A stretch of DNA of 64,000 bases from Rebecca billardiae RCC1528 (GCA_965240325.2 OZ251230.1:1798001-1862000); one strand, 5' to 3'. Shown: positions 2,171 to 49,959, counted from the first letter of the stretch. The notes: generated from the letters alone by a model not told the origin. A program made the numbers and translations.

Positions 2171-2625
2171 ATAGATAAATTGAAACTCACAAGTCGGGCG
2201 AGTTGGTTCACCGTTTCCGGTGATCCACGCGAAATCCGGATGAAAGATGCGGCCTTGCGGGGTATAAATTAGCAGGAAATTATGGCCCGCGGTGCAGGGC
2301 GGAGCGCGCAGCGTGGAGCCCGCACCAGCGGGCCCGAACCACGTTTCAAAAAGATCTTTTATCAAGAAATAGGGACGCGGGGGCCGATTTTTAGGGCTGG
2401 CGGAGACCGAGTTTTGATTTTTGAGACCCTCTCTACACACGCATCACGGAGAAAAAAACCGCGCCCACGAGATTCCCCTAATCAATCGTGGACGGCCGGG
2501 CGTGAGAGTTCACTTCTGTGTGAAGTAGTCTGACGGTTACACGTCCAATACAAGCGTCAGCTTCTTTGAGGCTATTTTTGCACGTCCTTACGGGATCAGC
2601 GAAGTAACCAACCGATATATATTGG

Positions 2626-2800
2626 CTTCGTCGGGGTCGTATTCACTACTGGAGAACATTTGCACCGCGCTTCGTATTCATATGTATGGTTCACGCAGGC
2701 ATAAAATCGCTTCGTCGGGGTCGTATCCACTATACTGGAGAACATCATTTGCACCGCTTCGTTTTCATACATTATAATGTATATATGGTTCATGGACTGC
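2626..2800. repeat. Degenerate ~85-bp tandem repeat inside A1
   Basis: GCTTCGTCGGGGTCGTAT..CACTA..CTGGAGAACAT..TTGCACCGC recurs at ~2626 and ~2709. Confidence 0.7.
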
Positions 2801-2978
2801 TACGGGGTCGAGCAGAATATCATCGATATTCATCAGGCGCACGTGTGCGTATTCATCATCAGCCTTCGGGAATTGGGAGTAGCTATTGGCCTTTTGTCCT
2901 CTGGCGAGCCAGTTGTGCGCACTTGAGCAGGCCTTGAGCAGGCTCGAGGCCACTTTTTTGCGCTCACGTGGACATCGG

Positions 2979-3790
2979 ATGCCAAGCACGTCAGCTGGCG
3001 ACGCCGACGAGGACCGCGCTCGCCGCGTATTGAACGTGCTGCTCGAATCCGGGGCAGTGAAGAAGGTGGCTAAGAGCACGCTCCAGAGCATCGCTGCTGC
3101 CATCTCAGTCGTGAGGCACAAGCAGGACGTGCCCTCTGCGGCGGTGAAGTACAACGTGCCCAAATGGTCGATCTACAACTTCGTTCGCAAGGTCCGCACC
3201 GTGCTGGAGGACGAGGGCGCAATCGGCAGGGGGAGCGCCACACAAACTGATCACCGACTTCACCACGCGCCCCGCAGGCCAGCTCCCTCCCTCCTCCTCA
3301 CCCGGCCCAACAGCTGGCAGCCGCTTTGCGGCACTCGCCGCGCTCGACGGGGAAATGCCCGCTGCAGAGAAAGCACAGCCGCAGCGGGGGCGCCCGGCCG
3401 GCTCGCTCAGCCTGCTGGGCACGCTCAACCTAGGCGTCACGTGCTACCTCGGCTCGCTGCTGGCGGCGCTGCTCGCGTGCCCTTCCATCGTCTCGCTCGC
3501 CACATCTGCCGCGGCTGAGCAGTCCACCAACCCCATCGTGTCCCGAGCATGCGCTCGCTGGCGCTCGCGCATGTCAACTGCGAGTGGCCCAGCGAGGTGG
3601 GGCCGACGCGTAGCTTGCTCGAGCCGCTCCACGACGCGATCGCGGAGGTCTGTCGGTGGACAACGGCGTTTGGGCAGCAGCAGCAGGACGCGTGCGAGGT
3701 GCTGTACAAAATCATGGAGGCCCTGGCTGGCTGCGACGAGGCGTGCTCATACCTTGGCTTGCTCGAGTGCCTCGGTCAGCTGGCGAGCGA
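2979..3790 (+). pseudogene. Frameshifted ORF remnant: psq-like HTH followed by USP (peptidase C19) Cys box and QQD box
   Basis: SAAVKYNVPKWSIYNFVRK (HTH-like); GTLNLGVTCYLGSLLAAL at ~3420-3470 (cf. GLxNxGNTCYxNS); FGQQQQDACEVLYKIMEAL at ~3670-3725; the motifs lie in different frames. Confidence 0.65.
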
Positions 3791-4315
3791 GCAGCCCTCG
3801 CAGCAGCAGCGCGTGCCGACGCCGACGATCTCGCAGCAGCAGCGCGTGCCGACGATCTCAGTCGGCCATGACTTCGACTGTACACAATCGGCGCCTCGCC
3901 GGCGGCTGCGATGGGCCCGCCCGGCCGCGCGGCGGGCGGCGGCGCGCCGCTGGAGTCTACTCGCTGCCGGCTGCCGGGCTCGCGGCCGGGCGGGCCCACT
4001 CTCGATCGCGACGGAGGGTGCGACGGAGGGTGCACCGCCACCGCGGGCCCCGAACTACTGCGCGCTCCCGAGCGCGTGCCTCCGAGCGCGGGGCGGCCGC
4101 TTGCTGCAATGGCCGCCTCGATGAGGTGCGGCAACGCGCCCCTCACCTGCCTGCGCCGGTCTGTTTTGTGGCGGTGTCTTTGTGCAGTGTTGGATGGCGT
4201 CAATCACGCCTTAACCAAGTGTGCACGTTAAAACATAGTAAACTGTACGTTCGTTCTACGGAAAAGGACCGCGGAACGCGGTCATTATGGGGGTAGTGAA
4301 CAACGTTCGTCAACG

Positions 4316-5833: not shown

Positions 5834-6031
5834 GTCAAGTGGAATAACATTTTATATAATTATAATCTGCTGATTAAAATCAGAAGCCCGCGTGCTGTGT
5901 CTCCTGTGTCTCGGACCGTTGAGAGTTTGAGACATCACGGGTGATCAACATCACCGGGCCGTCACGGAACCGGAGAGTCGGACCAAGCCGGACCCGGTCC
6001 ATCCAAGGCCAAGGGCTATGATGCATTCGGA

Positions 6032-7521: not shown

Positions 7522-7522
<1 letters not shown>

Positions 7523-7616
<94 letters not shown>
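7523..7616. repeat. (AG)n microsatellite
   Basis: Pure AG run directly after the B1 3' end. Confidence 0.97.
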
Positions 7617-7618
<2 letters not shown>

Positions 7619-8019: not shown

Positions 8020-8092
<73 letters not shown>

Positions 8093-8160
8093 CGGAGAGA
8101 GAGAGAGACAGAGAGAGAGCCAGATGTATGTATGTATGTACTATATATATATACAGAGAG
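8020..8160. repeat. Imperfect (AG)n plus (TATG)n/(TA)n microsatellite
   Basis: Seen directly. Confidence 0.9.
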
Positions 8161-8322
8161 GGGCAGGGCTGCGGCCCGAGTGCGGGTGGCGCATTGCCTG
8201 ACCTGGACCTTGGAAGGCGCGGACGCATTCTATGTGTCTGCTGCACTCTGAGCCTGACGCTTTCAGCCTGTTGCACTTGTACAGCAGAGTAATCCGCACT
8301 GAGAATACTGTCGTCGTCGTTA

Positions 8323-9922
8323 TGGCCCGCGGTGCAGGGCGGAGCGCGCAGCGTGGAGCCCGCACCAGCGGGCCCGAACCACGTTTCAAAAAGATCTTTG
8401 ATCAAAGAAAAAAGGGACGGGGGACGATTTTCAGGGCTGGAGGAGACCGAGTTTCGAATTTTGAGACTCCCTTACAGGTGCATCCTCGTCGAAAAAGGGC
8501 GCGCCCGGCTCTTTTGTATTCAGAGGAATCAACGAAACCCACGCCCAAGTGTGCCAGGGTGAGTAATTACGGGTGGACTCAGTCGTCCATGTGTGACCAT
8601 AGTAAATAAATATGGGCCTCGCCGCCGCAAGAACGACTCTCACCAACTCCAATACTGCGAGACATTGAAAAATACCCGCAGCTATTCGTCGCCAGCCCAT
8701 TTCATAGTCACTGATCGACGCACCGAGCTGGCGAGCCTCAAATTTGCCGTCGTCGCAAGGCGCAGCAGGTTTGAGCCCGTTTCGGAGGTGGCGAGGGCGC
8801 CGCGCGACTCTCGCCTCCAAGCAAGGGCGGGCGATGGGCAGGTGCGCGCGGCCAGTGGCGCCTGGAGCGCGCGTCTGCGGCGGGTCCCGACGGCCGTCGA
8901 CATCGTGTTCGTGCCCCGCTCACTAGTCACTCCGCGCGCCCCTGCCGCCCTGTCGATGCCTGCGCGGCCGGGGCCGCGCGTCAGCGCAGCCGCCGCCCTT
9001 TGTTCAGGCTCTCGCAAGCTCGGGGGCAGCGGCGCCTGACTGATGCCGGACTGATCGATCTCTGAGTCTCCGACTTCACCACACGCCCCCCTTGTCATGC
9101 CTCTCCGCCAGGGTCTCCCAGAACTCTTCTTCAGAGCAGGCGCGCCAACCCGAATCCATCGATCTGTTCCGTGCCGGCACTCTCGGCCCGCGCCGGCAAG
9201 TCTGTCTGCAGCGCTGGACGGGCGGACCTAGGAGGACGAGCTGCGGCGCGGACGACGGTGGTGCGCGACGTCCCCAGAGCTGGCCGTGCCTCTGCGACGC
9301 GTGCCGAGCCTGACCGAGGTGTGTCACCCCGTGACCCCGTGCAGTGCAACCGCGGCGTGCGGAGTGAATAACAATCACCGGTGCCCTCGCACCTCGGCAC
9401 ACACAGTGCTCCCTCTGGCTGTCTGCTCCGCGTGGCCTGGCGTGCACGTAGATAGAGTTGCGCTCATGCGTCGATCACGCCTCGCGCCCGCCTGTCGGCC
9501 GTCGCGCAGGCGCTGGTCGAACCCTACTCGGACCAGTGCAAATCATCTACTCCTGCGGCGCTGCCCGGCGGCGCGCGGTGACGACAGACAGCGCGGTCAG
9601 CAGCAGCGGCCCGAACGAATTCGCGGCCCCGCACCGTGTTCCCTGGCTGTCAGCTCCACGTGGCCTGGCGTGCACGTGGAGTCGCGCTCATGCGTCGATC
9701 ACGCCTCGTCGCATCCGCCTGTACACAATCCGGGCGCCGGCGCCGGCGGCTGCGATGGGCCCGCGCCCGGCGCCGGCACCGGGGCGCAGCGGCGCGCCGC
9801 TGGAGTCTAGTTGTACGGGCATGCAACTGGTCTGTCAATAGACGACTGCGACGGAGGGTGCACCGCCACCGCGGGCCCCGAACTACGTTCGTTCTACGGA
9901 AAAGGACCGCGGAACGCGGTCA
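8323..9922 (+). mobile_element. Family A element A2 (alpha body)
   Basis: Both family A termini present; sub-terminal IR at 9867-9877; body shared with A4 and A7. Confidence 0.9.
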
Positions 9923-11208
9923 TGGCCCGCGGTGCATGCAGGGCGGAGCGCGCAGCGTGGAGCCCGCACCAGCGGGCCCGAACCACGTTTCAAAAAGATC
10001 TTTGATCAAGAAAAAAGGGACGGGGGGCGGCGGAAAAAAGGGACGGGGGGCGATTTTTAGGGCTGGCGGGGACCGAGTTTCGAGTTTTTGAGATCGCATT
10101 GAGAGGTCTATCAGGCCAAAAAAAACCGCGCCCAGCTGATTCCCTTAAGTAAAGTGCGATCTGGACGTCAGCTGGACGTGACATTAGTGTAACGGTTCGT
10201 TACGAGCGAATCGTACTCGTCTTCCCGGATCGCGTGACGTCCGGACTGGGCCACATCCGGATCGTCGGAGGTGACGTGCCCCGGCACGATGGGCGATGGC
10301 GGATATGCGGGACGGCGCCTGCACGTGCCTCCGGACCCGCCTCCCGCTTGCTGCTCACGCAGTCAGCTGCGACCGTGGCGCATGATCGCAGAAGCAGTGC
10401 CGGCAGTACGGCCTGCATCAGCTAGTGCCGCGCCGTCGTGGCGCGCGCGGTACGGTTGCGCGTTTGCAGCGCTCGCCGCTCGGCGACGGCACGCGCGTGC
10501 GGCTCAGGTGTGTCAAATGCGGTCTCGTCGGCGCGCTTTCGCCTGCCACCTCGTGCACCCGTGCCGCCAGTTTCATCGTCTTCATGAGGACTGCTGCTGC
10601 TGTCGCCATCCGCTCTCCATCACCCCGAGTCGCCGGTCGCGCGGCGCGCGCGGTAGGCACTAGGCAGGGCGTACGGTCACTCACCCGTGCAACGGGTCAA
10701 GTGGCCAGAGTACGTCTGGTCGTTGGCTGGCACGGGCCGCAGCGCTAAAGCACCCTGCTGTCACACCCGACTCCTTCAGTACTCCGAGCTCCGCGGCACG
10801 ACTCACTCGGCACGATCGCGGACGGGTCGGATCCGAGCTGATCAGCCAGAGTTGGACACAGTTTGGCAGCTACTAGTAGTAATTCCGATGCCGATGGCAC
10901 GATCGCGGACGGGTCGGATCCGAGCTGATCAGCCAGTTGGACATTTGGCAGCTAGTTGCCAGACGGACGTCCGATTTGACGACCGGTGCCGGGTGCGGTC
11001 TCAGGTCCGCTGCTGTGATTGTGTGAAGTGTGAATGAGTCTCGCGGTCGCGCAGGCAGGGCGACGGTCGGACTAACTATAGCTTCAGTCATCTCAGAACC
11101 GACTTCAACTGGCGAACTGCCACTACGGCGGAGAGCCGCGATTGCACGGCCACCGCGGGCCCCCAACTGCGTTGACTCTATGCAGAAAAGGACCGCGGAA
11201 CGCGGTCA
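9923..11208 (+). mobile_element. Family A element A3 (beta body), abutting A2
   Basis: GGTCA^TGGCCCGCGG junction; sub-terminal IR at 11151-11161; body shared with A5 and A6. Confidence 0.9.
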
Positions 11209-11246
11209 TATTATATATATATATATATATAAATATATATATATAT
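11209..11246. repeat. (TA)n microsatellite
   Basis: Directly follows the A3 3' end. Confidence 0.9.
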
Positions 11247-11306: not shown

Positions 11307-11429
11307 GGCCTGGCCGGCGGCCCGCCTGGCGCCGGCTGGCGGCGGCAGGCCTGGCCGGCGGCCCGCCTGGCGCCGGCTGGCGGCGGCAGGCCTGGCCGGC
11401 GGCCCGCCTGGCACCGGCTGGCGGCGGCA
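11307..11429. repeat. 41-bp GC-rich minisatellite x3
   Basis: GGCCTGGCCGGCGGCCCGCCTGGCGCCGGCTGGCGGCGGCA at 11307, 11348 and 11389. Confidence 0.92.
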
Positions 11430-11680
11430 GCCGGAGTCGCAGGCCACGGCCATCGCCCGTCCGCATCGATATCGGATGCGTGGTTATCGTCATTCGTGAT
11501 GATGCCGCCGTCCACCGCTGGGACGCTCGCGCCTCGCTGGCCACGCACGGGCCATGCCACATGCAGGCGATGAGCAGCAGCTTTGGCTGCGGGCTGACGC
11601 ACAATTAGTGCTCAGGCCGCGTGATGCCAAGCAGCGCACGCTCGTCCACAGGCCGGTGAGGGCGTGGCAAAGATCCTCAT

Positions 11681-12624: not shown

Positions 12625-14184
12625 CTACGCCTGCAGTGCTACAAGTATACCTGCCTCGGCCGCTGGCCGGCCGCGCTGCTGGCTAGGAGCCAGCCGGTGC
12701 CAGCCAGCCGGTGGCCGGAGTCGCTGCACCTCACCCGCCGATGGCGCTGGGGCGTGGACGCTCGCGGGCGCTGCGACCCCGGCGGCGCGCTTGCAGCTGC
12801 ATCCAAACAGCATGCCGCGGTGGGGCGAGATGCCCCCCGCGGTGGGGGGCGCTGCCGTGGACGCGTCCGAGACGTTCGCCGTGAATACCGTGACGGTGTA
12901 CGTAGCTGCAGCGGCGATCCTCTGCGCCCGTCGCGGGCTCGGCACGCGCGCAAGCAGCGGCGCCCAGAGCCGCTCCATGTAGTGGCCCTCCTCAATGTTG
13001 TCTGCGCGGCTGAGCCGCGCGGCGAGAGCCGCCCAGAGCTTGCGCTCGTGCCGCCGCACCTGCGCGCTGGTGGTGGCGAACGTGCCGCCGTAGCACACCG
13101 GGACGAGCGGCTGGCGCAGCCGGCTGAGCACGGCCGTTGCGTCCGCGAGCCCCGCCCCCTCGACCACCGAGGCGATCCACGCGCCGAGCGGCCGCACCGG
13201 CGCGTTGAAGAGCCCGCCCTGCGCTGCAGAGTCGGTCTGCGCGTGCTCCGTCACGTACTGCCGCATCTGAAAGGTGCCGAGGACGCTCAGGTTGTGCCAG
13301 CTGGACCAGGGCTCCTGTACGGGGCAGGCACGGTCCTTGACCCGAGCCCGCGCGAGCGGGCTCAGCTCGCCAGGCGCGGCAGCCGGGCGGAAGCCGCAGC
13401 CGAAGGAGCGCGCGTGCGCCGCACCCGCCAGCGAACACATGGGCACACGCATCTTGTGCGCGTGTGCGACGCCGCCGGCGAAGGAGGAGTCTTTCATGAA
13501 GAAGATCATCGGCGCGAGCGAGTCCCACTGCGTGTGCAGGTGGTGCGCGTACGTGTGGTCGCACCGCCCCACGTTGGGCAGCACCATCACGCGCGCCCCG
13601 GCCGGAGCGCCGAGCACGGGCCGGCCACACTTGGAGTACACGCTCACGCGGCCGACGCGCACGCCGCAGTCTGCGAGCTTCTCGATCGCGGCGTCGAGCC
13701 AGTCGAGCGCGAGGGTGCAGTGCGAGAGGACGATCTCGGCGGACACGGGGGACGCCGGGTCCGCGACGCGGCCGTGGCCGTCGAAGCGGGGCCAGTGCAC
13801 GACGTCCGTCGTGCTGGACGTCAGCGGGTGCCACGTACCTTCGAGGCACGTGTGGCAGAACTGGCACGCGGAGACGTATGAGTCGGGTGGCGGGCGCGGC
13901 TCCGACCTGGCGGTATGCGCGACGCCGTGGGAGTCGATGAATGACATCTCGACGAGCGAGCCGCACCCCCAGGCCGCCTTGGTCATCCTTTTCCGGCAAC
14001 CCTCGGCCGTCGTCGGCGACTTCTTCTCTTTGTACCATCCGTAGCCACCCAGGATTAGCCGCGTGCTGCACGTGCCCAACGCGCGGAACCAGCAGCCCGG
14101 GCCTGGCTGACTCGGGGCTGGTGATATGGCGGCGATCAGAGGGAGGGTAAGACCCGGCAAGAGCACGTGCGTCATTAGCTTCAT
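12625..14184 (-). CDS. Secreted DUF3431-like protein
   Basis: Signal peptide; LPNVGRCDHTYAHHL, YGGTFATT and GHYMERLW motifs. Confidence 0.72.
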   Translation of the reverse strand: MKLMTHVLLPGLTLPLIAAISPAPSQPGPGCWFRALGTCSTRLILGGYGWYKEKKSPTTAEGCRKRMTKAAWGCGSLVEMSFIDSHGVAHTARSEPRPPPDSYVSACQFCHTCLEGTWHPLTSSTTDVVHWPRFDGHGRVADPASPVSAEIVLSHCTLALDWLDAAIEKLADCGVRVGRVSVYSKCGRPVLGAPAGARVMVLPNVGRCDHTYAHHLHTQWDSLAPMIFFMKDSSFAGGVAHAHKMRVPMCSLAGAAHARSFGCGFRPAAAPGELSPLARARVKDRACPVQEPWSSWHNLSVLGTFQMRQYVTEHAQTDSAAQGGLFNAPVRPLGAWIASVVEGAGLADATAVLSRLRQPLVPVCYGGTFATTSAQVRRHERKLWAALAARLSRADNIEEGHYMERLWAPLLARVPSPRRAQRIAAAATYTVTVFTANVSDASTAAPPTAGGISPHRGMLFGCSCKRAAGVAAPASVHAPAPSAGEVQRLRPPAGWHRLAPSQQRGRPAAEAGILVALQA

Positions 14185-14296
14185 GGCTCAAGGCCCGTCG
14201 TCACCGGCGGCCATTGTCACTTTGCATCGTACGTATTTATGGTGGGTGGTCAGTCACCGGAACAAGCTCCCCCAGGCTGCCCCCAGATCACGAGCA

Positions 14297-18110: not shown

Positions 18111-19686
18111 TGGCCCGCGGTGCAGGGCGGAGCGCGCAGCGTGGAGCCCGCACCAGCGGGCCCGAACCACGTTTCAAAAAGATCTTTGATCAAAGAAAAA
18201 AGGGACGGGGGACGATTTTCAGGGCTGGAGGAGACCGAGTTTCGAATTTTGAGACTCCCTTACAGGTGCATCCTCGTCGAAAAAGGGCGCGTCCGCCGTC
18301 TTGAATAGTGAACAGAGGAATCAACGAAACCCGCGCCCAAGTGTGCGAGGCAGGGTAATTGTGGGTAGACTCTCCTTAATGTAGTGTGACCATAGTAAAA
18401 TAATATGGCCTCGCCGCTGCAAGATGCCAAGAACGACCGTTGACATAATCGTCCAACCAACTCCAATAGTGCGAGAGATTGAAAATACCCGCCGCAGCTA
18501 TCCGTATAGTCGGAGCCGGAGGGGGCGCGGCGCGCGGCGTGTGCGGCCCGCGTTTGTACGCCGCGGCTGCGGCGACAGGAGCTCAAGGAGGCGCCAGCCA
18601 CGAGCGACCGACGGGTGAGGACGGCGATGGGCAGGTGCGCGCGGCGAGTGGCGCCTGGAGCGCGCGGCTGTGGCGGGTCCCGACTGCCGTCGACATCGCG
18701 TTCGTGCCCCCGCTCACTCCGCGCGCCCCCGCCGCCCCGTGTCGATGCCTGTGCGCGGCCGCGCGCGTCGCCCGGGGCGCCCCGCTGCCGCGCCGCGGCA
18801 GCCGCCCTGTATTCGGGCTCTCGCAAGCTCGGGGGCAGCGGCGCCTGATGCCGGACTGATCGATCTCTGAGTCTTCGACTTCACCACGCGCCGCCCTTGC
18901 CATGCCTTTCCGGGGAGCGCCGACGATCCGAGTCCATCGTCGACGGTCGACCGAGTCTGAGCGAGGGCTACGCCTCGGAACTGAACGGTACTCTACGAGG
19001 AGGACGAGCTGCGCGGGCGACGGTGGTGCGTGCCGTCCCCAGAGCTGGCTGTGCCTCTGCAACGCGTGCCGAGCCTGATCGAGGTGTGTCCGCCCGTGCA
19101 CGCGCGGCGTGCGCGAACGATCTGTGACTGCGGTGCCCTCGAACCTCGGCACTGCGTGCCGTCCCTCGGGCTGTCAGCTCCGCGTGGCCTGGCGTGCACG
19201 TAGAGTTGCGCTCATGCGTCGATCACGCCTCGCGCCCGCCTGTCGGCCGTCGCGCAGGCGCTGGTCGAACCCTACTCGGACCAGTGCAAATCATCTAACT
19301 ATCCTGGCGCTGCCGGTGCGCGGTGACCCGGGACAGCGGTCACAGTCAGCAGCACGGCGGCCCGAACGAATCCGCGGCCCCGCACCGTGCTCCCTGGCGG
19401 TCAGCTTCGCGTGGCCTGGCGTGCACGTGGAGTCGCGCTCATGCGTCGATCACGCCTCGTCGCATCCGCCTGTACACAATCGGCGCCGCGCCGGCGGCTG
19501 CGAAGTGCGATGGGCCCGCCCGCGGCGCGGCGGGCCGGCGGCGCGCCGCTGCCCGCTGGTGGAGAGTCTAGTTGTACGGGCATGCAACTCCGGGTCTGTC
19601 AATGGACGACTGCGACGGAGGGTGCACCGCCACCGCGGGCCCTGAACTACGTTCGTTCTACGGAAAAGGACCGCGGAACGCGGTCA
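18111..19686 (+). mobile_element. Family A element A4 (alpha body)
   Basis: Both termini present; TTA^TGGCCC...GGTCA^TTG. Confidence 0.9.
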
Positions 19687-34664: not shown

Positions 34665-35843
34665 TGACCGCGTTCCGCGGTCCTTTTCTGCATAGAATCA
34701 ACGCAGTTGGGGGCCCGCGGTGGCCGTGCAATCGCGGCTCTCCGCCGTAGTGGCAGTTCGCCAGTTGAAGTCGGTTCTGAGATGACTGAACTCTGAAGCT
34801 ATTAGTCCGACCGTCGCCCTGCCGGCTGCCTGCGCGACCGCGAGACTCATTGGCACACTAGTCACACAAGTTTCACAGCAGCGGACCTGAGACCGCACCC
34901 GGCACCGGTCGTCAAATCGGACGTCCGTCTGCCAACTAGCTGCCAAATGTCCAACTGGCTGATCAGCTCGGATCCGACCCGTCCGCGATCGTGCCATCGG
35001 CATCGGACGTCCGTCTGACAACTATTACTCACTAGTAGCTGCCAAACTGTCCAACTCTGGCTGATCAGCTCGGATCCGACCCGTCCGCGATCGTGCCGAG
35101 TGAGTCGTGCCGCGGAGCTCGGAGTACTGAAGGAGTCGGGTGTGACAGCAGGGTGCTTTAGCGCTGCGGCCCGTGCCAGCCAATGACCAGACGTACTCTG
35201 GCCACTTGACCCGTTGCACGGGTGAGTGACCGTACGGCGAAAGCGCGCCGACGAGACCGCATTTGACACACCCGAGCCGCACGCGCGTGCCGTCGCCGAG
35301 CGGCGAGCGCTGCAAACGCGCAACTACCGCGCGCGGCGGCCCCGGCGCGCGCGCCACGACGGCGCGGCACTAGCTGATGCAGGCCGTACTGCCGGCACTG
35401 CTTCTGCGATCATGCGCCACGGTCGCAGCTGACTGCGTGAGCAGCAAGCGGGAGGCGGGTCCGGAGGCACGTGCAGGCGCGCTCGCAGCATCCGCCATCG
35501 TCATCGTGCCGGGCCACGTCACCTCCGACGATCCGGATGTGGCCCAGTCCGGACGTCACGCGATCCGGGACGACGAATACGATTCGCTCGTAACGAACCG
35601 TTACGCTAAAGTCACGTCCGGCCCACGTCCTGCAGATCGCACTTTACTTAGGGAATATCGTGGGCGCGTCCATTTCTCGCTAATCGATGTCTCAGTTGCG
35701 GTCTCAAAATTCGAAACTCGGTCTCTTCCGGCCTTGAAAATCGTCCCCCGTCCCTTTTTTCTTGATCAAAGATCTTTTTGAAACGTGGTTAGGGCCCACG
35801 GAGCGGGCTCCACGCTGCGCGTTCCGCCCTGCACCGCGGGCCA
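34665..35843 (-). mobile_element. Family A element A5 (beta body, variant 5' end)
   Basis: Reverse-complement termini TGACCGCGTTCCGCGGTCC...CACCGCGGGCCA. Confidence 0.9.
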
Positions 35844-36190: not shown

Positions 36191-37490
36191 TGGCCCGCGG
36201 TGCAGGGCGGAGCGCGCAGCGTGGAGCCCGCACCAGCAGGCCCGAACCACGTTTCAAAAAGATCTTTGATCAAGAAAAAAGGGACGGGGGGCGGATTTTT
36301 AGGGCTGGCGGAGACCGAGTTTCGAGTTTTTGAGATCGCATAGCAGAGAGGTCTATTAGGCCGAAAAACACCGCGTCCACGATATTCCCTAAGTAAAGTG
36401 CGATCTGGACGTCAGCCGGACGTGACTTTAACGTAACGGTTCGTTACGAGCGAATCGTATTCGTCGTCCCGGATCCGGCGTGACGTCCGGACTGGGCCAC
36501 ATCCGGATCGTCGGAGGTGACGTGCCCCGGCACGATGGCGGATGCGGGACGGCGCCTGCACGTGCCTCCGGACCCGCCTCCCGCTTGCTGCTCACGCAGT
36601 CAGCTGCGACCGTGGCGCATGATCGCAGAAGCAGTGCCGGCAGTACGGCCTGCATCAGCTAGTGCCGCGCCGTCGTGGTCGCGCGCGCGGTAGTTGCGCG
36701 TTTGCAGCGCTCGCCGCTCGGCGACGGCACGCGCGTGCGGCTCAGGTGTGTCAAATGCGGTCTCGTCGGCGCGCTTTCGCCTGCCACCTCGTGCACCCGT
36801 GCCGCCAGTTTCATCGTCGGCGCGCTTTCGCCTGCCACCTCGTGCACCCGTGCCGCCAGTTTCATCGTCTTCATGAGGACTGCTGCTGCTGTCGCCATCC
36901 CGGCTCTCCATCATCCCGAGTCGCGCGGCGCGCGCGGTAGGCAGGGCGTACGGTCACTCACCCGTGCAACGGGTCAAGTGGCCAGAGTACGTCTGGTCGT
37001 TGGCTGGCACGGGCCGCAGCGCTAAAGCACCCTGCTGTCACACCCGACTCCTTCAGTACTGGCCGAGCTCCGCGGCACGACTCACTCGGCACGATCGCGG
37101 ACGGGTCGGATCCGAGCTGATCAGCCAGAGTTGGACAGTTTGGCAGCTCCTAGTAGTAATTCCGATGCCGATGGCACGATCGCGGACGGGTCGGATCCGA
37201 GCTGATCAGCCAGTTGGACATTTGGCAGCTAGTTGTCAGACGGACGTCCGATTTGACGACCGGTGCCGGGTGCGGTCTCTGAGGTCCGCTGCTGTGATTG
37301 TGTGAAGTGTGCCAATGAGTCTCGCGGTCGCGCAGGCAGGGCGACGGTCGGACTAATAGCTTCAGTCATCTCAGAACCGACTTCAACTGGCGAACTGCCA
37401 CTACTGTACGGCGGAGAGCCGCGATTGCACGGCCACCGCGGGCCCCAACTGCGTAGATTCTATGCAGAAAAGGACCGCGGAACGCGGTCA
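36191..37490 (+). mobile_element. Family A element A6 (beta body)
   Basis: Both termini present; near-identical to A3 with an internal ~50-bp duplication at ~36764-36868. Confidence 0.9.
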
Positions 37491-39083: not shown

Positions 39084-39309
39084 CGTCGATCAAGCAGCAA
39101 GGTACCAGCATTCATTCCTTTGGTACCAGTACCAAGTTCAAAGTCTGCGACGACCACCCGCTGCTCACCAGTGACCAGGCACGCCTTTTGATTCTCCGTC
39201 CACCAACTGGGCGGGCCGTCCGCGTCCGGGGCGACGGGCCGTCAGCTTGCCGGCCAGGCGGTGGCGTTGCCCTCGGCCCGCTTGCCTACTGACTGCTCCA
39301 CTCTCCGCA

Positions 39310-40280
39310 AGCGCGCCTGCACGTGCCTCCTGACGCGTCTCTCGCTTGCTCACTCAGTCAGCTGCGGTCACGCGGCCGCCGGCCCGACAGCCAGCCGACG
39401 GAGGGAAGATTTGAGCCGCGGCCGCGGCTCGGCGCCGCCGTGCGCGGGCGGGCGTCCGCGTGCCTTACCGTGAGCAGTGGCGCACTCTCGCAGGCGGTCT
39501 CAAGGAGAGCTGCGCGTGATCCGCATTTCTCGCCCGCGCTGCCCGCTTGCTCACGCAGCCAGCTGCGCCTGCGGTGTCAGGCTCTGTGTCGCGCCCTGGG
39601 CCGCTGCCACGGCCACTGCTTGCAACACACCGCCACACCTTCATTCACAGCAGCAGCCGAGACGAGCAGGCACTTGACGTGCGGGAGCACTGCATGTGTC
39701 GCGACGCGCCGAAGAAGTGACTCTGGTGACTCACTGGCTGCCAGCGCTATTAATACTGCTGCTAGCGACTCTAGCCGACAGCTCGGGGCTGCGTCAGGGG
39801 CGTTCCCCGAGTTCCCCACTCTGGTCATACAGTACGGTGACATACAGTACGCTGCAAATTGAACCGTCTTCCTATTGAAACAGGCTTCCTCCATTTGAAG
39901 CGGGTACATTTGAATACGGAAAATGGCAAAGACCCCCCAGGGGGTCTTTGCTTTTCAGGAGCGTGTGGCAGGAACCCGGGAACGCCCTTGACCGGATCGT
40001 ACGCGGATGCCGATTCATTACAGTCACCGGCTCAGGCTGCAGCCGCTGCCCGCTGCAGGAGCTGTCAAAGTGCAGGCAGCACTCTGCACTGTCAGCTGTC
40101 CCGAAGCACGCGTCGCATGGTAAGCCTACTGCGACGCCGCCGTGATCCAGACCGGGGCGAAATACTAGCGAGTGCGGTCGACAGCGGATATACTTGAGGA
40201 CCGTGTAAGCTACCGCGTCCGACGCGGGCCCCCAACTACTGTAGCTGTGTTGGCAATGATCGATACAGTATACGATTATC
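39310..40280 (+). mobile_element. Degenerate family A-related remnant (boundaries uncertain)
   Basis: 39312-39366 resembles the beta body (GCGCCTGCACGTGCCTCC...CAGTCAGCTGCG); CGCGGGCCCCCAACTAC at ~40223-40239 resembles the sub-terminal IR region. Confidence 0.4.

Positions 40281-40329: not shown

Positions 40330-40379
<50 letters not shown>
40330..40379. repeat. (TA)n microsatellite
   Basis: Seen directly. Confidence 0.95.
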
Positions 40380-41196: not shown

Positions 41197-41288
<92 letters not shown>

Positions 41289-41348
41289 GAATGTGTGTGT
41301 GCGTGTGTGTGTGTGTGTGTGTGCCGTGTGTGTGCGTAGTATATATAT
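41196..41348. repeat. (TA)n(TG)n compound microsatellite
   Basis: Seen directly. Confidence 0.95.

Positions 41349-44262: not shown

Positions 44263-44332
<70 letters not shown>
44263..44332. repeat. (TA)n microsatellite
   Basis: Lies 13 nt beyond the A7 3' end. Confidence 0.95.
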
Positions 44333-44334
<2 letters not shown>

Positions 44335-44345
44335 CTGATGATATA

Positions 44346-45678
44346 TGACCGCGTTCCGCGGTCCTTTTCCGTAGAACGAACGTAGTTCAGGGCCCGCGGT
44401 GGCGGTGCACCCTCCATCGCAGTCGTCTATTGACAGACCCGGAGTTGCATGCCCGTACAACTAGACTCCAGCGGCGCGCCGCCGCCCGCCGCGCCGGGCG
44501 CGGGCCCATCGCACTTCGCAGCCGCCGGCGCGGCGCCGATTGTGTACAGGCGGATGCGACGAGGCGTGATCGACGCATGAGCGCGACTCCACGTGCACGC
44601 CAGGCCACGCGAAGCTGACAGCCAGGGAGCACGGTGCGGGGCCGCGGATTCGTTCGGGCCGCTGCTGCTGACTGACCACTTTCCCGCGGGTCACCGCGCA
44701 CCGGCAGCGCCAGGATAGTTAGATGATTTGCACTGGTCCGAGTAGGGTTCGACCAGCGCCTGCGCGACGGCCGACAGGCGGGCGCGAGGCGTGATCGACG
44801 CATGAGCGCAACTCTACGTGCACGCCAGGCCACGCGGTCGGCGGTGCTGTCAGCCCGAGGGAGCACGGTGCCGAGGTGCGAGGGCACCAGGCATGGCAAG
44901 GGCGGCGCGTGGTGAAGTCGGAGACTCAGAGATCGATCAGTCCGGCATCAGGCGCCGGCTGGCGCCGCTGCCCCCGAGCTTGCGAGAGCCCGAATACAGG
45001 GCGGCGCCGGCTGCCGCGGCGCAGGCGCCGGCCCGACGCGCGGCGGACGCGCAGGCAGTCGACACGGGGCGGCGGGGGCGCGCGGAGTGAGCGGGGCACG
45101 AACTCGATGTCGCCCGTCAGTCGGGACCCGCCGCAGCCGCGCGCACCAGGCGCCACTCGCCGCGCGTACCTCCCATCGCGGGGCCATCGCCGTCCTCACC
45201 CCGTCCCCTCGCGAGTGCGACGAGTCGGTCGCTCGTGGCTCGCCCCCTCGTCTTGCCTCTCGCAACCGACTGGCGTACAAAACGCGGCGGACGCGCCGCG
45301 CGCGATACGGATAGCTGCAGCGGATATTTATTTTCAATGTCTCGCACTATTGGAGTTGGTTGGACTATTATGTCAACGGTCGTTCTTGGCATCTTGCGGC
45401 GGCGCACTACATGAACGAGAGTCTACCCACAATTATTACCCAGCCTGGCACACTTGGGCGTGGGTTTCGTTGATTCCTCTGACTATACAAAAGGGCCGGG
45501 CGCGACCTTTTCGGCCGTGATGCGTGTTAGAGAGGGTCTCAAAATTCGAAACTCGGTCTCCTCCAGCCATGAAAATCGTCCCCCGTCCCTTTTTTCTTGA
45601 TCAAAGATCTTTTTGAAACGTGGTTAGGGCCCACGGAGCGGGCTCCACGCTGCGCGCTCCGCCCTGCACCGCGGGCCA
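44346..45678 (-). mobile_element. Family A element A7 (alpha body, variant 5' end)
   Basis: Reverse-complement termini; body shared with A2 and A4. Confidence 0.9.
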
Positions 45679-45752: not shown

Positions 45753-47478
45753 TGGCCCGCGGTGCAGGGCGGAGCGCGCAGCGTGGAGCCCGCTCCGTGG
45801 GCACTAACCACGTTTCAAAAAGATCTTTGATCAAAGAAAAAAGGGACGGGGGACGATTTTCAGGGCTGGAGGAGACCGAATTTCGAATTTTGAGACCGCA
45901 AAGAGACATCCATTAGCGAGAAATGGGCACGTCCGGCTTGTTTGTATTCAGAGGAATCAACGAAACCCACGTCCAAGTGTGCGAGGGTGGGTAATTGTGG
46001 GTAGACTGTGACCATAGTAAATAAGCACATGACCATAGTAAAACAAGCCTCGCTGCCGCTACTAGGCGCGCGCCAGACACGGAGCGCGCGCACCAGTTGC
46101 GTCGCGCTGCGCACGGCCACGGAGCATGCGCGACGAGATCGCGGCGGGGGCGGCGAGATCGCGGCGGGGGCGACGGGCAACAACCTGCCCGCGGGCGCGT
46201 TCGTCACTCGAGGAGCAGCGCGCAAGGGCGAGCCGAGTCCGGAGCACGCGAGCTCGTCGCTCGCCGCCCGGAGCAGAGCGCGCCGCTGCGAGCGAGCGGC
46301 GCGGCAGAGCTGATGAGCCGGATGCGCCCGGAGCTCGCGCGGCTGAAGGGCGAGCTCGAGCACGCGAGCTCGCGCCTCGACGCCGAGCGCGAGCTCCTCC
46401 TCAACTCGGTCGACGGCGGCGCGGAGGTGCAGCAGCGTGAGGACGAGCAGGAGCATCAGTGAAACGCGCGCCGGTTCCGGGTCGCGCAGCGGTGCCCAGC
46501 TGCCTGCCACGCGAGCGGCGGCCACGTGGCGCGAGGAGCTGCGTGGGGAAATCGCCGCGCGCGTCGACGCGGCGATCACCGGGCTGCAGGCCTCGGCAAT
46601 CGACGCGGTGCGCACCCTCGCCGCCAGCCGCGACGACTCCGCTGTCGAGCTGCAGCAGCTGCGCGCGCAGATGCCAGAAGTGCCGATGGGCGGCGGCGTA
46701 TCAGCAGGCTGACGTGCACGAGCACGTGACACGCGGAGGCGCTAGGCGCCAAGCTGGCGAAGTGCGGCGCCGAGCTCGACGAGCTGAGCGACGCGGCAAC
46801 GGACGCGCTGGGCGCCCGCGCCGCCATCGTCGCGGCGCCCTCCAGCAGCTCGAGCAGCTGTGGATAGTTGGCCGTCGAGGCGACCGCGGGTGTGACTCAC
46901 AGTGTGAGTGAGCCGGCGCGCGGCTCAGCCTGCCGCTGGCAGCCGCCGTCTTCGAGGCCGACGCGGCGGAGGAGGCGGCGGGCGAGCACGGCGGCGCGGT
47001 GGAGCAGGCGCGCACGCGCGGCGGCAGGCGCGACGCGCCGCTCGCCTCGTTCCACCGCCCCGAGCTCCGCTCGGTCGGTCTCGGTGCGAGGCTGCGCAGC
47101 CGGCAGGCCGGGGCCAGCAGTGGCGCGCGCTCTCGCTCTGCCGGCACGAGCGACCAGCGGCCCGTCGTCGAGCGCATGGCGCAGGGCGAGTACCTCAAGC
47201 AGGTGCGCCCGCTCGCGCGCACGCGCCGGCTCGCGCCGCGCCAGCGCCTCTCGCCCTGCCTGCGCGCGCGCGCCGGCCGCTAGTCCCCGCGGCGGCCCGC
47301 GGACCCGCGGCGACAGTCCTCGGCCCGCCGGCCCGGTGGGCGGCAGTGACTGAGTTGGCGGTGGCAGCTCAGGCGAACTGTTACACAAGTCAGACTGAGA
47401 CAGCAGCCGACGGAGGGTGCGCCGCGGGCCCCGAACTACGTTCGTTCTACTACGGAAAAAGACCGCGGAACGCGGTCA
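45753..47478 (+). mobile_element. Family A element A8 (unique coiled-coil-like cargo)
   Basis: Both termini present; alpha-type first ~290 nt, then unrelated sequence. Confidence 0.88.
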
Positions 47479-48024
47479 TATATATAGATCATGGCGCACG
47501 GCCCCCCCCCGAAACTGAAAGGTCTGAGCGTGAGCGAAAGCCGGGGGGGGGGCGGCGCACGTGCTCCGCAAAATCAAAAAGAGGATGCGCGCAGGATTTT
47601 GGGGATTTTTCGGTAGGTGGCCACCGCGTATGAGTGGATATCGCTGCCGCAATGATTGCGTTTGTAGTAGATGCTAATTTTAACGATAGTAACACTTAGG
47701 GGAAATGCAGGGCGGAATAGCACATAACACCAGCCGTGTGTTAGAACATTCCGTCATAGTAAGATGCCTGAATTGTAAGAGCCTGAAACAGCTCGCCAAC
47801 CATAGAAACGATAGGTTGGGTCGTCAGCTTTGATTCACGCGCTTCTGAAAAACAGCGTTTTAGATTAGACGCATCCCTCTTCTCTTAAGAGAACTGCGCT
47901 TCAAAAACACCGTTTCAACGAAAGACGATCGCCCGCCATTCAACTGAAACGAGATTCTGCATAAAGCGAACCAAAGATGTTATTGCGCGGGTAGTCCGAA
48001 CCGACGTTCCCGCGCGCTCTCATA

Positions 48025-49959
48025 TGACCGCGTTCCGCGGTCCTTTCGTAGAACCAACGTAGTTAGGGGCCCGCGGTGCCGACTCTCTGTCGGCTTGCTA
48101 ACCGAATACTAGCCAGCAGTATGTATCGTCATACAGACGCTGTCTGTCATCTAATTATTATAGTCTGACCGTCGGTGCCAACCTGAACAGTTCGCCTGTG
48201 AGCAGTGCCATGCTACGGCTCACTCAGTTGCCCGCCCACTGGCTCCGGGCCCGGGCTGCGGCCCGGGGGCCGAGCGAGGACTCTGGATCGCCGATGGCGA
48301 TACGGCCCGAGTCCGGCGACTAACTACTGCCGCATGGGCCATGCCACTCGTCAAGCCTCAAGAGTCAAGAGTCAAGGCTCCGGCTCGCAGCGGCACGTCG
48401 CCGTCGGCTTGCCTCGGCAACTCGGCCGGGGCCGATGGCGATGCCCGATGCCGATGGCGATGCCGATGGCAGCCCGGGGCCGCACGCCCCGCCACCGGAT
48501 TCCGGAATGGCTGCGCGGCTACAGTAGTCCCGCGACCCGGGGCCGCCCGGCGCCAGCGGGGTGACGGCCAGCCCCGGAGGCGGTTGCGACCAGTCCCTCG
48601 AGTAGTCTCGGGGCAGCGCACGCGCAGGGTGCGTGAATAAATCTTGCAGCAGCTGCAGCAGTTGTGCGGCTCCGTCGCCAGCCCATCGTCGCGACGCGGA
48701 AGACGCGCGGTGGCGGCGGCGCGGTCTCGGGGCAGCGCACGCGCAGGGTGCGTGAATCTTGCAGCAGCTGCAGGTTGTGCGGCTCCGTCGAGCCCATCGT
48801 CGCGACGCGGAGGACAGTAGACGAAGACCAGCTTGAGTGAACACGGCCTGCGAAGTGCGAGCGAGTCGACCGGGAACAGTCACGGGTCGCGAGTGCCACT
48901 CGCCCAGAAGCGACGTCTGCGTGGGGTGCGCGTCGGGCAGGCCCAAGAAGATGCGCAGCATCATGTTCAGGCCCACTAGGCCCAGCGCCTCGATCACCAC
49001 CTGCTTCTTCGCTGTGTTGATCATCTTCACTGCCGCGGTTCGCGCCGAGTTTGACTGGCGGCCGCACGCCCCGGCGGCGGGCACGGCCCGTGCGCTCGCC
49101 GTCCTGACGCGGCGGCGGTCCTGGATGCACTGCGGCACCTGGCCTGAACCCGCGTGCCACGCCACGCGCCGCCGCCGGGCGAGGCGTCGGCGGCGGCCGC
49201 CTCCGCCGCCAACGCGGCACGTCGCGCTGATCTGCGGTGCGAGCTGACCAGTCCTGAGCAACCGCTTCAAAATCAAATAGCCTGAGTAACCCCATAAATA
49301 AGGTAGTTGGCGCGTAAGATCGAATGGAGATAGATAGCGACTACGGTTATCTTTGTTTTGGCAATAATCAGAACTACACGAGATAATCGCGTTTACCCGT
49401 GGCGATCTCCATTAGCGGTCGTAGCTCCCGTAGCTCCAATTAACGGTTTTGCTGGGATCCTTCGCGTAAGATCGAATGGAGATAGATAGTGATCACGGTT
49501 ATCTCTGCTTCGGCAAGAATCAAAACCAAACGAGATAATAGCGTTTACGGCGATCTCCATTAGGTCGTAGCTCCCGTAGCTCCAATTAAACGGTTTTGCT
49601 GGGATCCTTCTCATAACAATTTTTGACTCGAAACAATCAAACGTCGCTCGGCAAACTCGTACTCCAGCATACAAGAATGACAAAAATACTCACTTGTTTC
49701 ACCCCCGGGGTATCTGATCCCACGTCCGTCCATCGACTTATGCGGAATGGCGTGGGCGCGCTTATTTCGTCAAGCGCGTAGTTGCTAATGCAGAGCACTA
49801 TGGGCCAACGTACCCCTCGAAAAAGCGAAAACTCACCATCCAACACCCCTCAAAATCGTCCCCCGTCCCCTTTTCTTTGATCAAAAGATCTTTTTGACAA
49901 CGTAGTGAGGGCCCCCGGCGGGGCTCCACGCTACGCGCTCCGCCCTACACCGCGGGCCA
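48025..49959 (-). mobile_element. Family A element A9 (diverged), nested in B2
   Basis: Reverse-complement termini; flanks rejoin to match the uninterrupted B1 sequence at 6431-6475. Confidence 0.88.
49311..49610. repeat. ~150-bp tandem repeat x2 inside A9
   Basis: CGCGTAAGATCGAATGGAGATAGATAG...GGTTTTGCTGGGATCCTTC occurs twice. Confidence 0.85.

What the first reader, a model, noticed from the sequence alone, without database searches (positions are those of the whole stretch)
2283..49959. Nine-copy cargo-swapping element family with asymmetric inverted repeats, a terminal GNA hairpin and A^T targets
Seen: nine 1.2-2.0 kb units start A^TGGCCCGCGGTG and end GACCGCG-GAA-CGCGGTC-A^T. The reverse complement of the 5' motif (consensus CACCGCGGGCC) sits about 45 nt inside the 3' end rather than at it. 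The first ~56 nt can also fold back on themselves. At least five different interiors lie between the same ends, and six of nine copies are preceded by TTA. Known: asymmetric TIRs plus hairpins define Helitron2/Helentron (HINE/DINE) elements, which usually target TT, whereas canonical Helitrons target A^T but have TC...CTRR ends. Inference: this is a hybrid-type, possibly undescribed rolling-circle (HUH) family with TG...CA ends and a hairpin only 1 nt from the terminus.
Basis: partly seen in the sequence, partly recalled or inferred. Interest (0 to 1): 0.9.

Follow-up and report, generated by a model that had tools for sequence, protein, structure and literature searches.

The report
Helitron2-like non-autonomous transposon family
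Nine copies of a real mobile-element family sit between the genes of a GC-rich, haptophyte-like alga; their ends match the known Helitron2 (rolling-circle) design, so this is probably a new family of a known kind, but the enzyme that moves it was not found.

Summary
There are exactly nine 5' ends and nine 3' ends, correctly paired, giving nine units of 1179-2002 bp on both strands. All nine have flank T at -3 and A at -1 on the 5' side, and T at +1 on the 3' side.

All copies share about 150-190 bp at the 5' end and about 45-65 bp at the 3' end. Between these lie five unrelated interiors: subfamily A (C2, C4, C7), subfamily B (C3, C5, C6), and C1, C8 and C9.

The end design matches the published Helitron2/HINE definition point by point:
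- an 11-nt inverted repeat 1 nt from the 5' end;
- its partner 45 nt inside the 3' end in 8 of 9 copies;
- a 5' hairpin that uses the 5' repeat;
- an invariant 3' GAA-loop hairpin;
- a 5' terminal T;
- no target duplication of 3 bp or more.

The "hybrid" reading is not needed. Fusarium Helitron2 elements already show TNAT targets and GAA-loop hairpins.

Rolling-circle mobilisation is still inferred. No Rep/helicase or any other transposase is in the window, and the host genome could not be searched. "AT duplicated" and "inserted between A and T" cannot be told apart by sequence, so recombinase and other HUH models survive.

Verdict: a real feature, most likely a new member of a known kind, of moderate interest.

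The parts
2283..4284 (+). Copy C1 (2002 bp), unique interior. The 3' inverted repeat lies at 4039-4049. About 190 bp are inserted between it and the terminal 45 nt.
8323..9922 (+). Copy C2 (1600 bp), subfamily A; used as the reference copy for the sub-features listed below.
8324..8334 (+). 5' asymmetric inverted repeat GGCCCGCGGTG, 1 nt from the 5' terminus (C2).
8324..8374 (+). 5' three-tier hairpin (element nt 2-52). Its outer stem is the 5' repeat paired with CACCAGCGGGCC.
   Evidence: dG -20 to -24 kcal/mol, z -3.2 to -3.8 in three variants
8363..8386 (+). Left-end copy of a direct-repeat module: CACC(A)GCGGGCC followed by CGAAC-CAC-GTTT.
   Evidence: read directly from the alignments
9867..9877 (+). 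3' subterminal inverted repeat CACCGCGGGCC, ending 45 nt before the 3' terminus (C2).
9879..9891 (+). Small hairpin CGAAC-TAC-GTTCG next to the 3' repeat. One pair changes on both sides in subfamily B.
9905..9921 (+). Invariant terminal hairpin GACCGCG-GAA-CGCGGTC, followed by the terminal A at 9922.
   Evidence: 7 pairs, never vary
9923..11208 (+). Copy C3 (1286 bp), subfamily B, joined head-to-tail to C2 with no base between. Followed by (AT)20.
18111..19686 (+). Copy C4 (1576 bp), subfamily A.
34665..35843 (-). Copy C5 (1179 bp), subfamily B.
36191..37490 (+). Copy C6 (1300 bp), subfamily B. Contains a perfect 51-bp x2 internal tandem repeat at 36763-36869.
44346..45678 (-). Copy C7 (1333 bp), subfamily A. 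Its 3' end lies next to (AT)35 at 44263-44333.
45753..47478 (+). Copy C8 (1726 bp), unique interior. Head-to-head with C7, 74 bp apart. Its 3' repeat is shortened to CCGCGGGCC.
48025..49959 (-). Copy C9 (1935 bp), unique interior; the most divergent ends.

Best explanation
These are non-autonomous members of a Helitron2-type (HLE2) rolling-circle transposon family in a GC-rich, intron-poor, haptophyte-like nuclear genome.

Proposed mechanism, all steps inferred:
1. A Rep/helicase transposase encoded elsewhere nicks the top strand between the flank A and the element's first T. This point is the foot of the 5' hairpin, in the context T-N-A^T-GGCCC.
2. The helicase unwinds the strand 5' to 3'.
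3. The 3' module (CACCGCGGGCC plus a small hairpin) and the invariant GAA hairpin mark the stop.
4. A second cut follows ...GGTCA. The cut contexts at the two ends, TTA^T and TCA^T, are alike, as expected if one nuclease cuts both.
5. Joining the ends gives a circle with the junction GGTCA|TGGCC. There the two asymmetric repeats pair around the terminal hairpin and the nick site.
6. The circle integrates in one orientation at T-T-A^T-W sites in AT-rich intergenic DNA, without target duplication.

Shown directly: the copies, their sharp boundaries, the end architecture, the target motif, the swapped interiors and the fold predictions. Inferred: the enzyme and every chemical step.
For: End architecture against the Bao & Jurka Helitron2 definition (PMC3627910) and the HINE description (PMC4067079):
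- The 5' repeat is 1 nt from the end. The definition allows 0-2 bp, and HINEs show about 2-4 nt.
- The 3' repeat ends 45 nt from the 3' terminus and lies upstream of a hairpin. HINEs show 38-60 bp.
- The 5' hairpin uses the 5' repeat.
- The 3' hairpin is invariant in all nine copies.
- The element starts with T.

Other support:
- The shared ends measure about 190 bp at the 5' side and 45-65 bp at the 3' side. Chlamydomonas non-autonomous Helitron2 elements share 200 bp and 50 bp with their master.
- The joined ends fold with the two repeats paired in 8 of 9 copies, at dG -42 to -48 kcal/mol. The natural C2|C3 junction gives -50.1, z -4.8.
- No target duplication of 3 bp or more is consistent.
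- Flank positions -3, -1 and +1 are invariant. The probability given flank composition is about 1e-12.
- TNAT targets and GAA-loop hairpins are reported for Fusarium Helitron2 (PMC5148889).
- The termini stay at about 95-100% identity while interiors within a subfamily fall well below that, down to unalignable stretches, and differ completely between subfamilies. This suggests the ends are held by selection for mobility.
- Internal short tandem or dispersed repeats occur, as in HINE/DINE-1 elements.
- The precise head-to-tail C2|C3 junction fits an A^T target recreated by the element's own terminal A.
Against: - No Helitron_like_N, PIF1-type helicase or any other transposase domain occurs in the 121 stop-to-stop ORFs of 180 aa or more. 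The partner is therefore unseen.
- The published HLE2 targets read here are T^T or T^(T/C), or TNAT in Fusarium and Chaetomium; here the cut falls between A and T.
- The 3' hairpin sits 1 nt from the terminus. HINEs show about 8-35 nt.
- The hairpins gain almost no covariation support. The terminal stem never varies, and the small hairpin has one double change, reached by 39 of 500 shuffles.
- The top strand folds only about 1 kcal/mol better than the bottom strand.
- A 2-bp AT on each side explains the flanks equally well.
- Only nine copies from one 64-kb window were available.
Confidence: 0.6

Rival explanations
1. The family is mobilised by a different single-strand HUH nuclease, such as a Replitron-like one-tyrosine Rep or an undescribed Rep. 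It would use the same hairpin-guided cutting at T-N-A^T but would not be a Helitron.
For: - The hairpins at both ends, the one-orientation target and the similar cut contexts at both ends (TTA^T and TCA^T) are general features of HUH transposons.
- Putative Replitron proteins are reported in haptophytes (PMC10288648).
- A direct-repeat module of about 23 nt lies near both ends.
Against: [quoted passage not shown] The termini here, TGGCCC and CGGTCA, are not direct repeats.
- The asymmetric inverted-repeat layout is so far specific to Helitron2/Helentron.
Confidence: 0.12
2. The family is a double-stranded circle integrated by a serine or tyrosine site-specific recombinase (IS607-like or Crypton-like), with a 2-bp AT crossover. 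The AT would then appear on both sides of each copy.
For: - With each boundary shifted by 1 nt, AT flanks 8 of 8 independent insertions.
- At the joined ends the AT lies between imperfect inverted arms, CGCGGTC and GGCCCGCG.
- IS607-like elements exist in eukaryotes and lack TIRs and TSDs (PMC3627910).
Against: - No recombinase gene is in the window.
- High-copy non-autonomous families with swapped interiors are not, to my knowledge, described for eukaryotic IS607-like elements or Cryptons (own knowledge).
- This model does not explain the long 5' hairpin, or the 3' repeat placed 45 nt inside the end.
- Two of the three 5' hairpin variants keep their stems through G-T pairs that exist only on the top strand.
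Confidence: 0.1
3. The family is a cut-and-paste DDE element (MITE-like) with weak terminal inverted repeats, TGGCC...GGTCA. It would make a 2-bp AT, a TA, or a 3-bp TWA (PIF/Harbinger-type) target duplication.
For: - The termini TGGCCCGCGG and the reverse complement of the 3' end, TGACCGCGTT, match at about 8 of 11 positions.
- Three of eight insertions have identical TTA or TAA on both sides.
Against: - TWA fits only 3 of 8 insertions and TA only 3 of 8. Four of the eight read TTA...TAT, a systematic difference rather than decay.
- C2 and C3 abut with no duplicated bases of their own.
- No DDE domain is in the window.
- No DDE superfamily is known to make an AT-specific 2-bp duplication (own knowledge).
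- The strongest inverted repeat is asymmetric, not terminal.
Confidence: 0.07

Closest known systems
Helitron2 (HLE2) non-autonomous elements, e.g. Helitron-1N1_CRe and CRe-1/2/3 of Chlamydomonas (Bao & Jurka 2013, PMC3627910)
   Same: - A 5' asymmetric repeat 0-2 bp from the end that forms a 5' hairpin.
- A 3' repeat placed subterminally, upstream of a 3' hairpin.
- A 5' terminal T.
- About 200 bp at the 5' end and 50 bp at the 3' end shared between elements with different interiors.
- No regular target duplication.
   Different: - The Chlamydomonas elements insert after TTTT; these insert at T-N-A^T.
- The 3' repeat is 45 nt from the end here, against 20-30.
- The hairpin abuts the terminus here.
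- The Rep/helicase partner has not been seen here.
FoHeli1/FoHeli2, Helitron2 of Fusarium oxysporum, and relatives in Chaetomium (Chellapan et al. 2016, PMC5148889)
   Same: - A TNAT motif at the 5' insertion boundary, with the same 1-nt uncertainty about the first T.
- GAA-loop hairpins.
- A 12-bp asymmetric repeat placed 38-51 bp from the 3' end.
- Joined-end (circular) forms were detected experimentally for one subgroup.
   Different: - The Fusarium elements end in ATTTT and start TCAG.
- Their GAA hairpin is at the 5' end; here it is at the 3' end.
- Those elements are autonomous, 5-6 kb, and encode Rep/helicase.
HINE / DINE-1 non-autonomous Helentrons (Thomas et al. 2014, PMC4067079)
   Same: - Subterminal inverted repeats of 12-15 bp: about 2-4 nt from the 5' end and 38-60 bp from the 3' end.
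- A 3' palindrome.
- An inner inverted repeat that makes a 5' hairpin.
- Central repeats.
- Many non-coding copies.
   Different: - HINEs insert in TT and carry T runs at their boundaries.
- Their palindrome lies 8-35 nt from the end.
- They are described from animal hosts.
Canonical Helitron1
   Same: Insertion between A and T without target duplication; a 3' hairpin.
   Different: - Ends are TG and GTCA here, not TC and CTRR.
- The hairpin is 1 nt from the 3' end, not about 11 nt.
- A 5' hairpin and asymmetric repeats are present here.
Replitrons (Craig 2023, PMC10288648)
   Same: - An algal host range with putative haptophyte members.
- HUH-type, orientation-specific insertion.
- A right-end palindrome.
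   Different: Replitrons carry short direct terminal repeats and no asymmetric inverted repeats. Their transposase is a one-tyrosine Rep without a helicase.

Membership tests
Helitron2 / HLE2 | 5' asymmetric inverted repeat 0-2 bp from the 5' terminus | tested here: met
   GGCCCGCGGTG starts at element nt 2 in all nine copies.
Helitron2 / HLE2 | 3' partner repeat placed subterminally (20-60 nt inside), upstream of a 3' hairpin | tested here: met
   CACCGCGGGCC ends 45 nt from the terminus in C2-C7 and C9. It is shortened in C8 and displaced to 234 nt in C1.
Helitron2 / HLE2 | 5' terminal hairpin that involves the 5' repeat | tested here: met
   Element nt 2-52 fold in all three sequence variants, at dG -20 to -24 kcal/mol and z -3.2 to -3.8.
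Helitron2 / HLE2 | 3' terminal hairpin | tested here: met
   A 7-bp stem with a GAA loop, invariant in 9 of 9 copies. It lies 1 nt from the end, closer than in described families.
Helitron2 / HLE2 | No target-site duplication; orientation-specific insertion | tested here: inconclusive
   No duplication of 3 bp or more is consistent (best 4 of 8). A 2-bp AT duplication cannot be told apart from A^T insertion. No empty site was available.
Helitron2 / HLE2 | Insertion in a T^T or T^(T/C) dinucleotide | tested here: not met
   The flanks are ...T-N-A | T... in all copies. A TNAT-type target is, however, reported for Fusarium Helitron2.
Helitron2 / HLE2 | Autonomous partner with the same termini that encodes a two-tyrosine Rep fused to a Pif1-like helicase | not testable with these tools
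   None is present in the window. Scans of the metagenome, viral and prokaryotic collections found no relatives. The host genome itself cannot be searched by DNA here.
Helitron1 (canonical) | 5' TC and 3' CTRR termini, with the hairpin about 11 nt from the 3' end | tested here: not met
   The ends are TG... and ...GGTCA, and the hairpin is 1 nt from the end.
Helitron1 (canonical) | Insertion between A and T without duplication | tested here: met
   A at -1 and T at +1 in every copy.
Replitron | [quoted passage not shown] | tested here: not met
   The termini TGGCCC and CGGTCA differ. Only a subterminal module of about 23 nt is directly repeated (definition).
PIF/Harbinger or Tc1/mariner MITE | Constant TWA (3-bp) or TA (2-bp) target duplication flanking terminal inverted repeats | tested here: not met
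   TWA fits 3 of 8 insertions and TA fits 3 of 8. Four of the eight read TTA...TAT.
IS607-like / Crypton-like recombinase elements | Serine or tyrosine recombinase gene; short crossover sequence repeated at both junctions | tested here: inconclusive
   AT on both sides in 8 of 8 insertions is compatible. No recombinase gene is in the window.

The most novel reading that the evidence does not exclude
The family is not moved by a Helitron Rep/helicase at all. It would be moved by an undescribed eukaryotic enzyme, either a new HUH Rep lineage or a recombinase with an AT crossover, that has converged on Helitron2-like ends. That would make it a new transposon group in the Haptista. Its nick site lies between two stems of a junction structure rather than in a hairpin loop.
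Probability: 0.15. Interest if true: 0.75.

Novelty: new member of a known kind. Interest (0 to 1): 0.35.

Why it matters
- Helitron-like elements are barely documented in haptophyte-like algae. The Tisochrysis transposon survey read here lists none, and the HELIANO paper's main text does not mention haptophytes.
- This family makes up 29% of a 48-kb gene-dense stretch. It lies within tens of bases of genes: C1 ends 31 bp before the start codon of a transporter gene, and one public transcript-like contig starts inside C1's terminal hairpin.
- It adds a clean case with a T-N-A^T target and a hairpin that abuts the terminus. This could help define how HLE2 transposases read their ends, and could improve Helitron annotation tools, which assume TT targets.
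- It does not open a new field unless the mobilising enzyme turns out not to be a Rep/helicase.

Tried and rejected
- **Transposase in the window.** Pfam scan of all 121 stop-to-stop ORFs of 180 aa or more found no Rep, helicase, DDE, reverse transcriptase or recombinase domain.
- **Metagenome scan with the 3' 22-mer.** One hit, a bacterial integron cassette array; a chance match.
- **Viral-contig scans.** Four patterns. The only two hits both lie inside a coding region of small, related contigs; chance matches.
- **Prokaryotic genome scan with the 5' 23-mer.** Nothing.
- **Other copies through the protein database.** The ORF that starts at the junction ATG (8322-8606) gave no hit. Element ORFs are not on record in the assembly index.
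- **Empty sites through flanking genes in public assemblies.**
  - Two of the three genes tried are not on record.
  - The transporter-gene contigs stop at the element boundary and do not settle the question.
- **Cargo identity.**
  - The C1 ORF search against 1.84 billion representatives gave one weak repetitive hit, E 1.3e-4.
  - A ubiquitin-hydrolase Cys-box trace is below Pfam's threshold, at E 0.003-0.004.
  - All nine weak PDB hits are USPs, at E 0.05-0.9.
  - The other interiors translate to Arg/Ala/Pro-rich sequence that does not look coding.
- **Covariation.** Too little variation to prove the hairpins.
- **Strand asymmetry of folding.** About 1 kcal/mol in favour of the top strand; not decisive.
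- **Rfam and tRNA scans.** Nothing.
- **Not attempted.** No Rep/helicase query sequence was available from any tool, so the host's transcripts could not be searched for one. Repbase and Dfam are not on hand, so an exact match to a described family could not be excluded.


Full report
**1. Observation**

The two terminal motifs are far above chance.
- The 5' 12-mer, allowing one mismatch, occurs 18 times against 1.5 expected.
- The 3' 18-mer occurs nine times with no mismatch against 0.01 expected.
- Longer and looser probes add no solo ends.
- blastn of each copy against the rest of the window finds no partial copies.

The ends pair into nine units of 1179-2002 bp, six on the plus strand and three on the minus strand. 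Alignment of the ends with 20 nt of flank shows sharp boundaries. Similarity begins exactly at TGGCCC and stops exactly at GGTCA. C2 and C3 abut head-to-tail with no base between them. C7 and C8 lie head-to-head, 74 bp apart.

**2. Anatomy**

*Shared ends and interiors.* All copies share about 150-190 bp at the 5' end and about 45-65 bp at the 3' end. The interiors fall into five groups:
- subfamily A: C2, C4, C7;
- subfamily B: C3, C5, C6;
- three singletons: C1, C8, C9.

C1 shares about 190 bp with subfamily A just upstream of the 3' repeat. Within subfamilies the interiors are 79-93% identical and full of indels. The first 100-150 nt and the last 50 nt stay at about 95-100% identity.

*Left end.* The element starts with T, followed by GGCCCGCGGTG at nt 2-12. 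This pairs with CACCAGCGGGCC at nt 41-52 to close a three-tier hairpin. The hairpin folds in all three sequence variants.

*Right end.* It has four parts:
- CACCGCGGGCC, ending 45 nt from the terminus;
- a small hairpin, CGAAC-TAC-GTTCG;
- an A-rich spacer;
- the invariant hairpin GACCGCG-GAA-CGCGGTC, followed by a final A.

*Direct-repeat module.* The block CACC(A)GCGGGCC + CGAAC-YAC-GTTYG occurs in the same orientation near both ends. It may be a protein-binding module; that is an inference.

*Joined ends.* When the two ends are joined in silico, the two asymmetric repeats pair around the terminal hairpin and the A|T junction in 8 of 9 copies. The natural C2|C3 junction folds the same way, at -50.1 kcal/mol and z -4.8.

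*Limits of the structural evidence.*
- The terminal stem never varies.
- The small hairpin has one double change, which 39 of 500 shuffles reach.
- Subfamily B can form a different small hairpin instead.
- The top strand folds only about 1 kcal/mol better than the bottom strand.

*C1.* It has about 190 bp inserted between the 3' repeat module and the last 45 nt. This looks like the acquisition of a new terminator, but that is conjecture.

**3. Target**

Over eight independent left flanks and eight independent right flanks:
- -3 is T in 8 of 8;
- -2 is T in 6 of 8;
- -1 is A in 8 of 8;
- +1 is T in 8 of 8;
- +2 is A or T in 8 of 8.

The ninth left flank is the end of C2, which reads TCA and also fits. 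Given flank composition, the three invariant positions have a probability of about 1e-12.

Flanks are 50-100% AT for most copies, in a window that is 34% AT. Several copies sit at the edge of (AT)n tracts.

No duplication of 3 bp or more is consistent: TWA fits 3 of 8, TA fits 3 of 8, and the best 3-bp model fits 4 of 8. If each boundary is moved by one base, AT flanks 8 of 8 insertions. "Element T...A inserted between A and T" and "element GG...TC with a 2-bp AT duplication" predict the same filled site and the same empty site. Sequence alone cannot choose between them.

The cut contexts at the two ends are alike: TTA^T in the flank at the left end, and TCA^T at the element's own right end.

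**4. Host and surroundings**

The window is eukaryotic. It carries a myosin motor, an MFS transporter, a Na/Ca exchanger, an Oxa1-like insertase, a CTLH/LisH protein and glycosyltransferases, mostly as long uninterrupted ORFs.

The best named myosin relatives are Prymnesium parvum (50% identity) and a Chrysochromulina genome protein (49%). Unnamed JGI, ENA and MMETSP proteins reach 49-53%. The host is therefore haptophyte-like, and its proteins are not in the named databases.

The nine copies lie between genes and make up 29% of 2283-49959.

The MFS ORF occurs exactly in two Logan assemblies. Their short contigs look like transcripts. One starts 8 nt inside C1's terminal hairpin. The other is 100% identical to the window downstream, but has ATATATA where C1 ends. 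This is unexplained and too short to count as an empty site.

**5. Search for the mobilising enzyme and for relatives**
- None of the 121 ORFs of 180 aa or more has a Rep, helicase, DDE, reverse-transcriptase or recombinase domain.
- Scans of the metagenome, viral and prokaryotic collections with terminal or subterminal motifs gave only chance hits or nothing.
- Element ORFs are absent from the protein collection.
- The interiors translate to sequence that does not look coding. The exception is C1.
  - It has a weak ubiquitin-hydrolase Cys-box trace: Pfam E 0.003-0.004, below threshold, and all nine weak PDB hits are USPs.
  - It has an upstream ORF without credible homologues.

"Cargo" is therefore mostly unidentified non-coding DNA.

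**6. Comparison with known kinds**

*Helitron2/HLE2.* The Helitron2 definition asks for a 5' repeat 0-2 bp from the end that forms a 5' hairpin, a 3' repeat upstream of a 3' hairpin, and a 5' T (PMC3627910). The HINE description gives repeats of 12-15 bp, about 2-4 nt from the 5' end and 38-60 bp from the 3' end, with a 3' palindrome and central repeats (PMC4067079). All of these are met here.

The extent of shared ends, about 190 bp and 45-65 bp, parallels the Chlamydomonas non-autonomous Helitron2 elements, at 200 bp and 50 bp.

Fusarium and Chaetomium elements insert at TNAT, with the same one-base ambiguity, and FoHeli hairpins have GAA loops (PMC5148889).

The remaining differences are a cut between A and T rather than T and T, TG...CA ends, and a hairpin 1 nt from the terminus.

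*Other families.*
- Canonical Helitron1 features (TC, CTRR, hairpin about 11 nt from the end) are not met.
- Replitrons have short direct repeats at or near the termini (PMC10288648). The termini here are not direct repeats.
- PIF/Harbinger and Tc1/mariner duplications are not met.

**7. Mechanism and rivals**

The best explanation is a non-autonomous HLE2 element moved in trans by a Rep/helicase through a single-stranded circle, as set out in the Best explanation section (confidence 0.6).

The rivals are:
- another HUH Rep (0.12);
- a recombinase with an AT crossover acting on a double-stranded circle (0.10);
- a DDE MITE with a 2-3 bp duplication (0.07).

The asymmetric repeat layout, the long 5' hairpin, and the G-T pairs that keep the 5' stem only on the top strand in two of its three variants favour a single-strand mechanism. 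None of these is proof.

**8. Verdict**

The feature is real and well defined. It is most likely a new family of a known kind (Helitron2-like, non-autonomous) in a lineage where such elements are hardly described. The claim of a new hybrid class is not supported. The decisive step is a genome-wide search of the source assembly for long copies with these termini.

Noticed in passing
L001 1-7 against window 4279-4285; L002 1-8: Two public short contigs carry the MFS gene. L002 starts 8 nt inside C1's terminal hairpin. L001 is 100% identical to the window from 4286 on, but has ATATATA in place of the element's end. This could be another allele, a (TA)n variant or an assembly artefact. It may also mean that transcription starts at the element's edge.
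   Followed up: partly
window 1842-1892 and 39307-39366: A 51-bp piece of the subfamily A interior (C2 8664-8714) recurs at 96% identity, reversed, 400 bp upstream of C1. A piece of about 57 bp from the subfamily B interior recurs at 86%. These could be captured host DNA or another small repeat.
   Followed up: partly
window 4059-4240 (inside C1): About 190 bp separate C1's 3' repeat module from its terminal 45 nt. The insert is bounded by AACTAC and AACTGTAC. It may record the capture of a new 3' end.
   Followed up: partly
window 3018-3730 (inside C1): A coding-looking stretch in shifting frames. It has an ATG-started ORF without credible homologues, then a ubiquitin-hydrolase-like Cys box, then a QQQDACE motif in another frame. 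It may be a decayed captured gene fragment. The evidence is weak.
   Followed up: partly
window 9933-9936 and about 10010-10031 (C3 5' end): C3 carries a 4-nt TGCA duplication right after the 5' repeat. It also has an insert of about 22 nt, rich in G and A, that resembles the adjacent GAAAAAAGGGACGGGGG sequence.
   Followed up: no
window 7523-7616, 8020-8119, 11208-11246, 40330-40379, 41212-41334, 44263-44333, 51263-51313: Long dinucleotide microsatellites, (AG)47-50, (AT)20-35 and (TG)61, fill the intergenic DNA. Several element 3' ends touch (AT)n tracts.
   Followed up: partly
window 11307-11430: A 41-bp GC-rich unit repeated three times at 98% identity, about 100 bp downstream of C3.
   Followed up: no
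window 14111-15496 (+): An ORF with a SAP domain and a retroviral-type aspartyl protease domain (Asp_protease_2 / gag-asp_proteas). It could be a host DDI1-like gene or a retroelement remnant.
   Followed up: no
window 19778-21394 (-) and 22515-23681 (-): Two neighbouring ORFs each carry a DXD-motif glycosyltransferase domain. They are probably paralogues.
   Followed up: no
window 53150-53820 (inside the myosin ORF, 52018-56376 -): A run of GC-rich degenerate tandem repeats, with periods of 6-33, lies within the long myosin reading frame.
   Followed up: no
L003 (metagenome contig C687J35021_10024579): The chance hit is a bacterial cassette array. Its short genes are separated by repeated attC-like sites (TAACGTTTGGTTAAGGGGCGGGCTTTAGCCCGTCCC...). 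It is unrelated to the finding.
   Followed up: no
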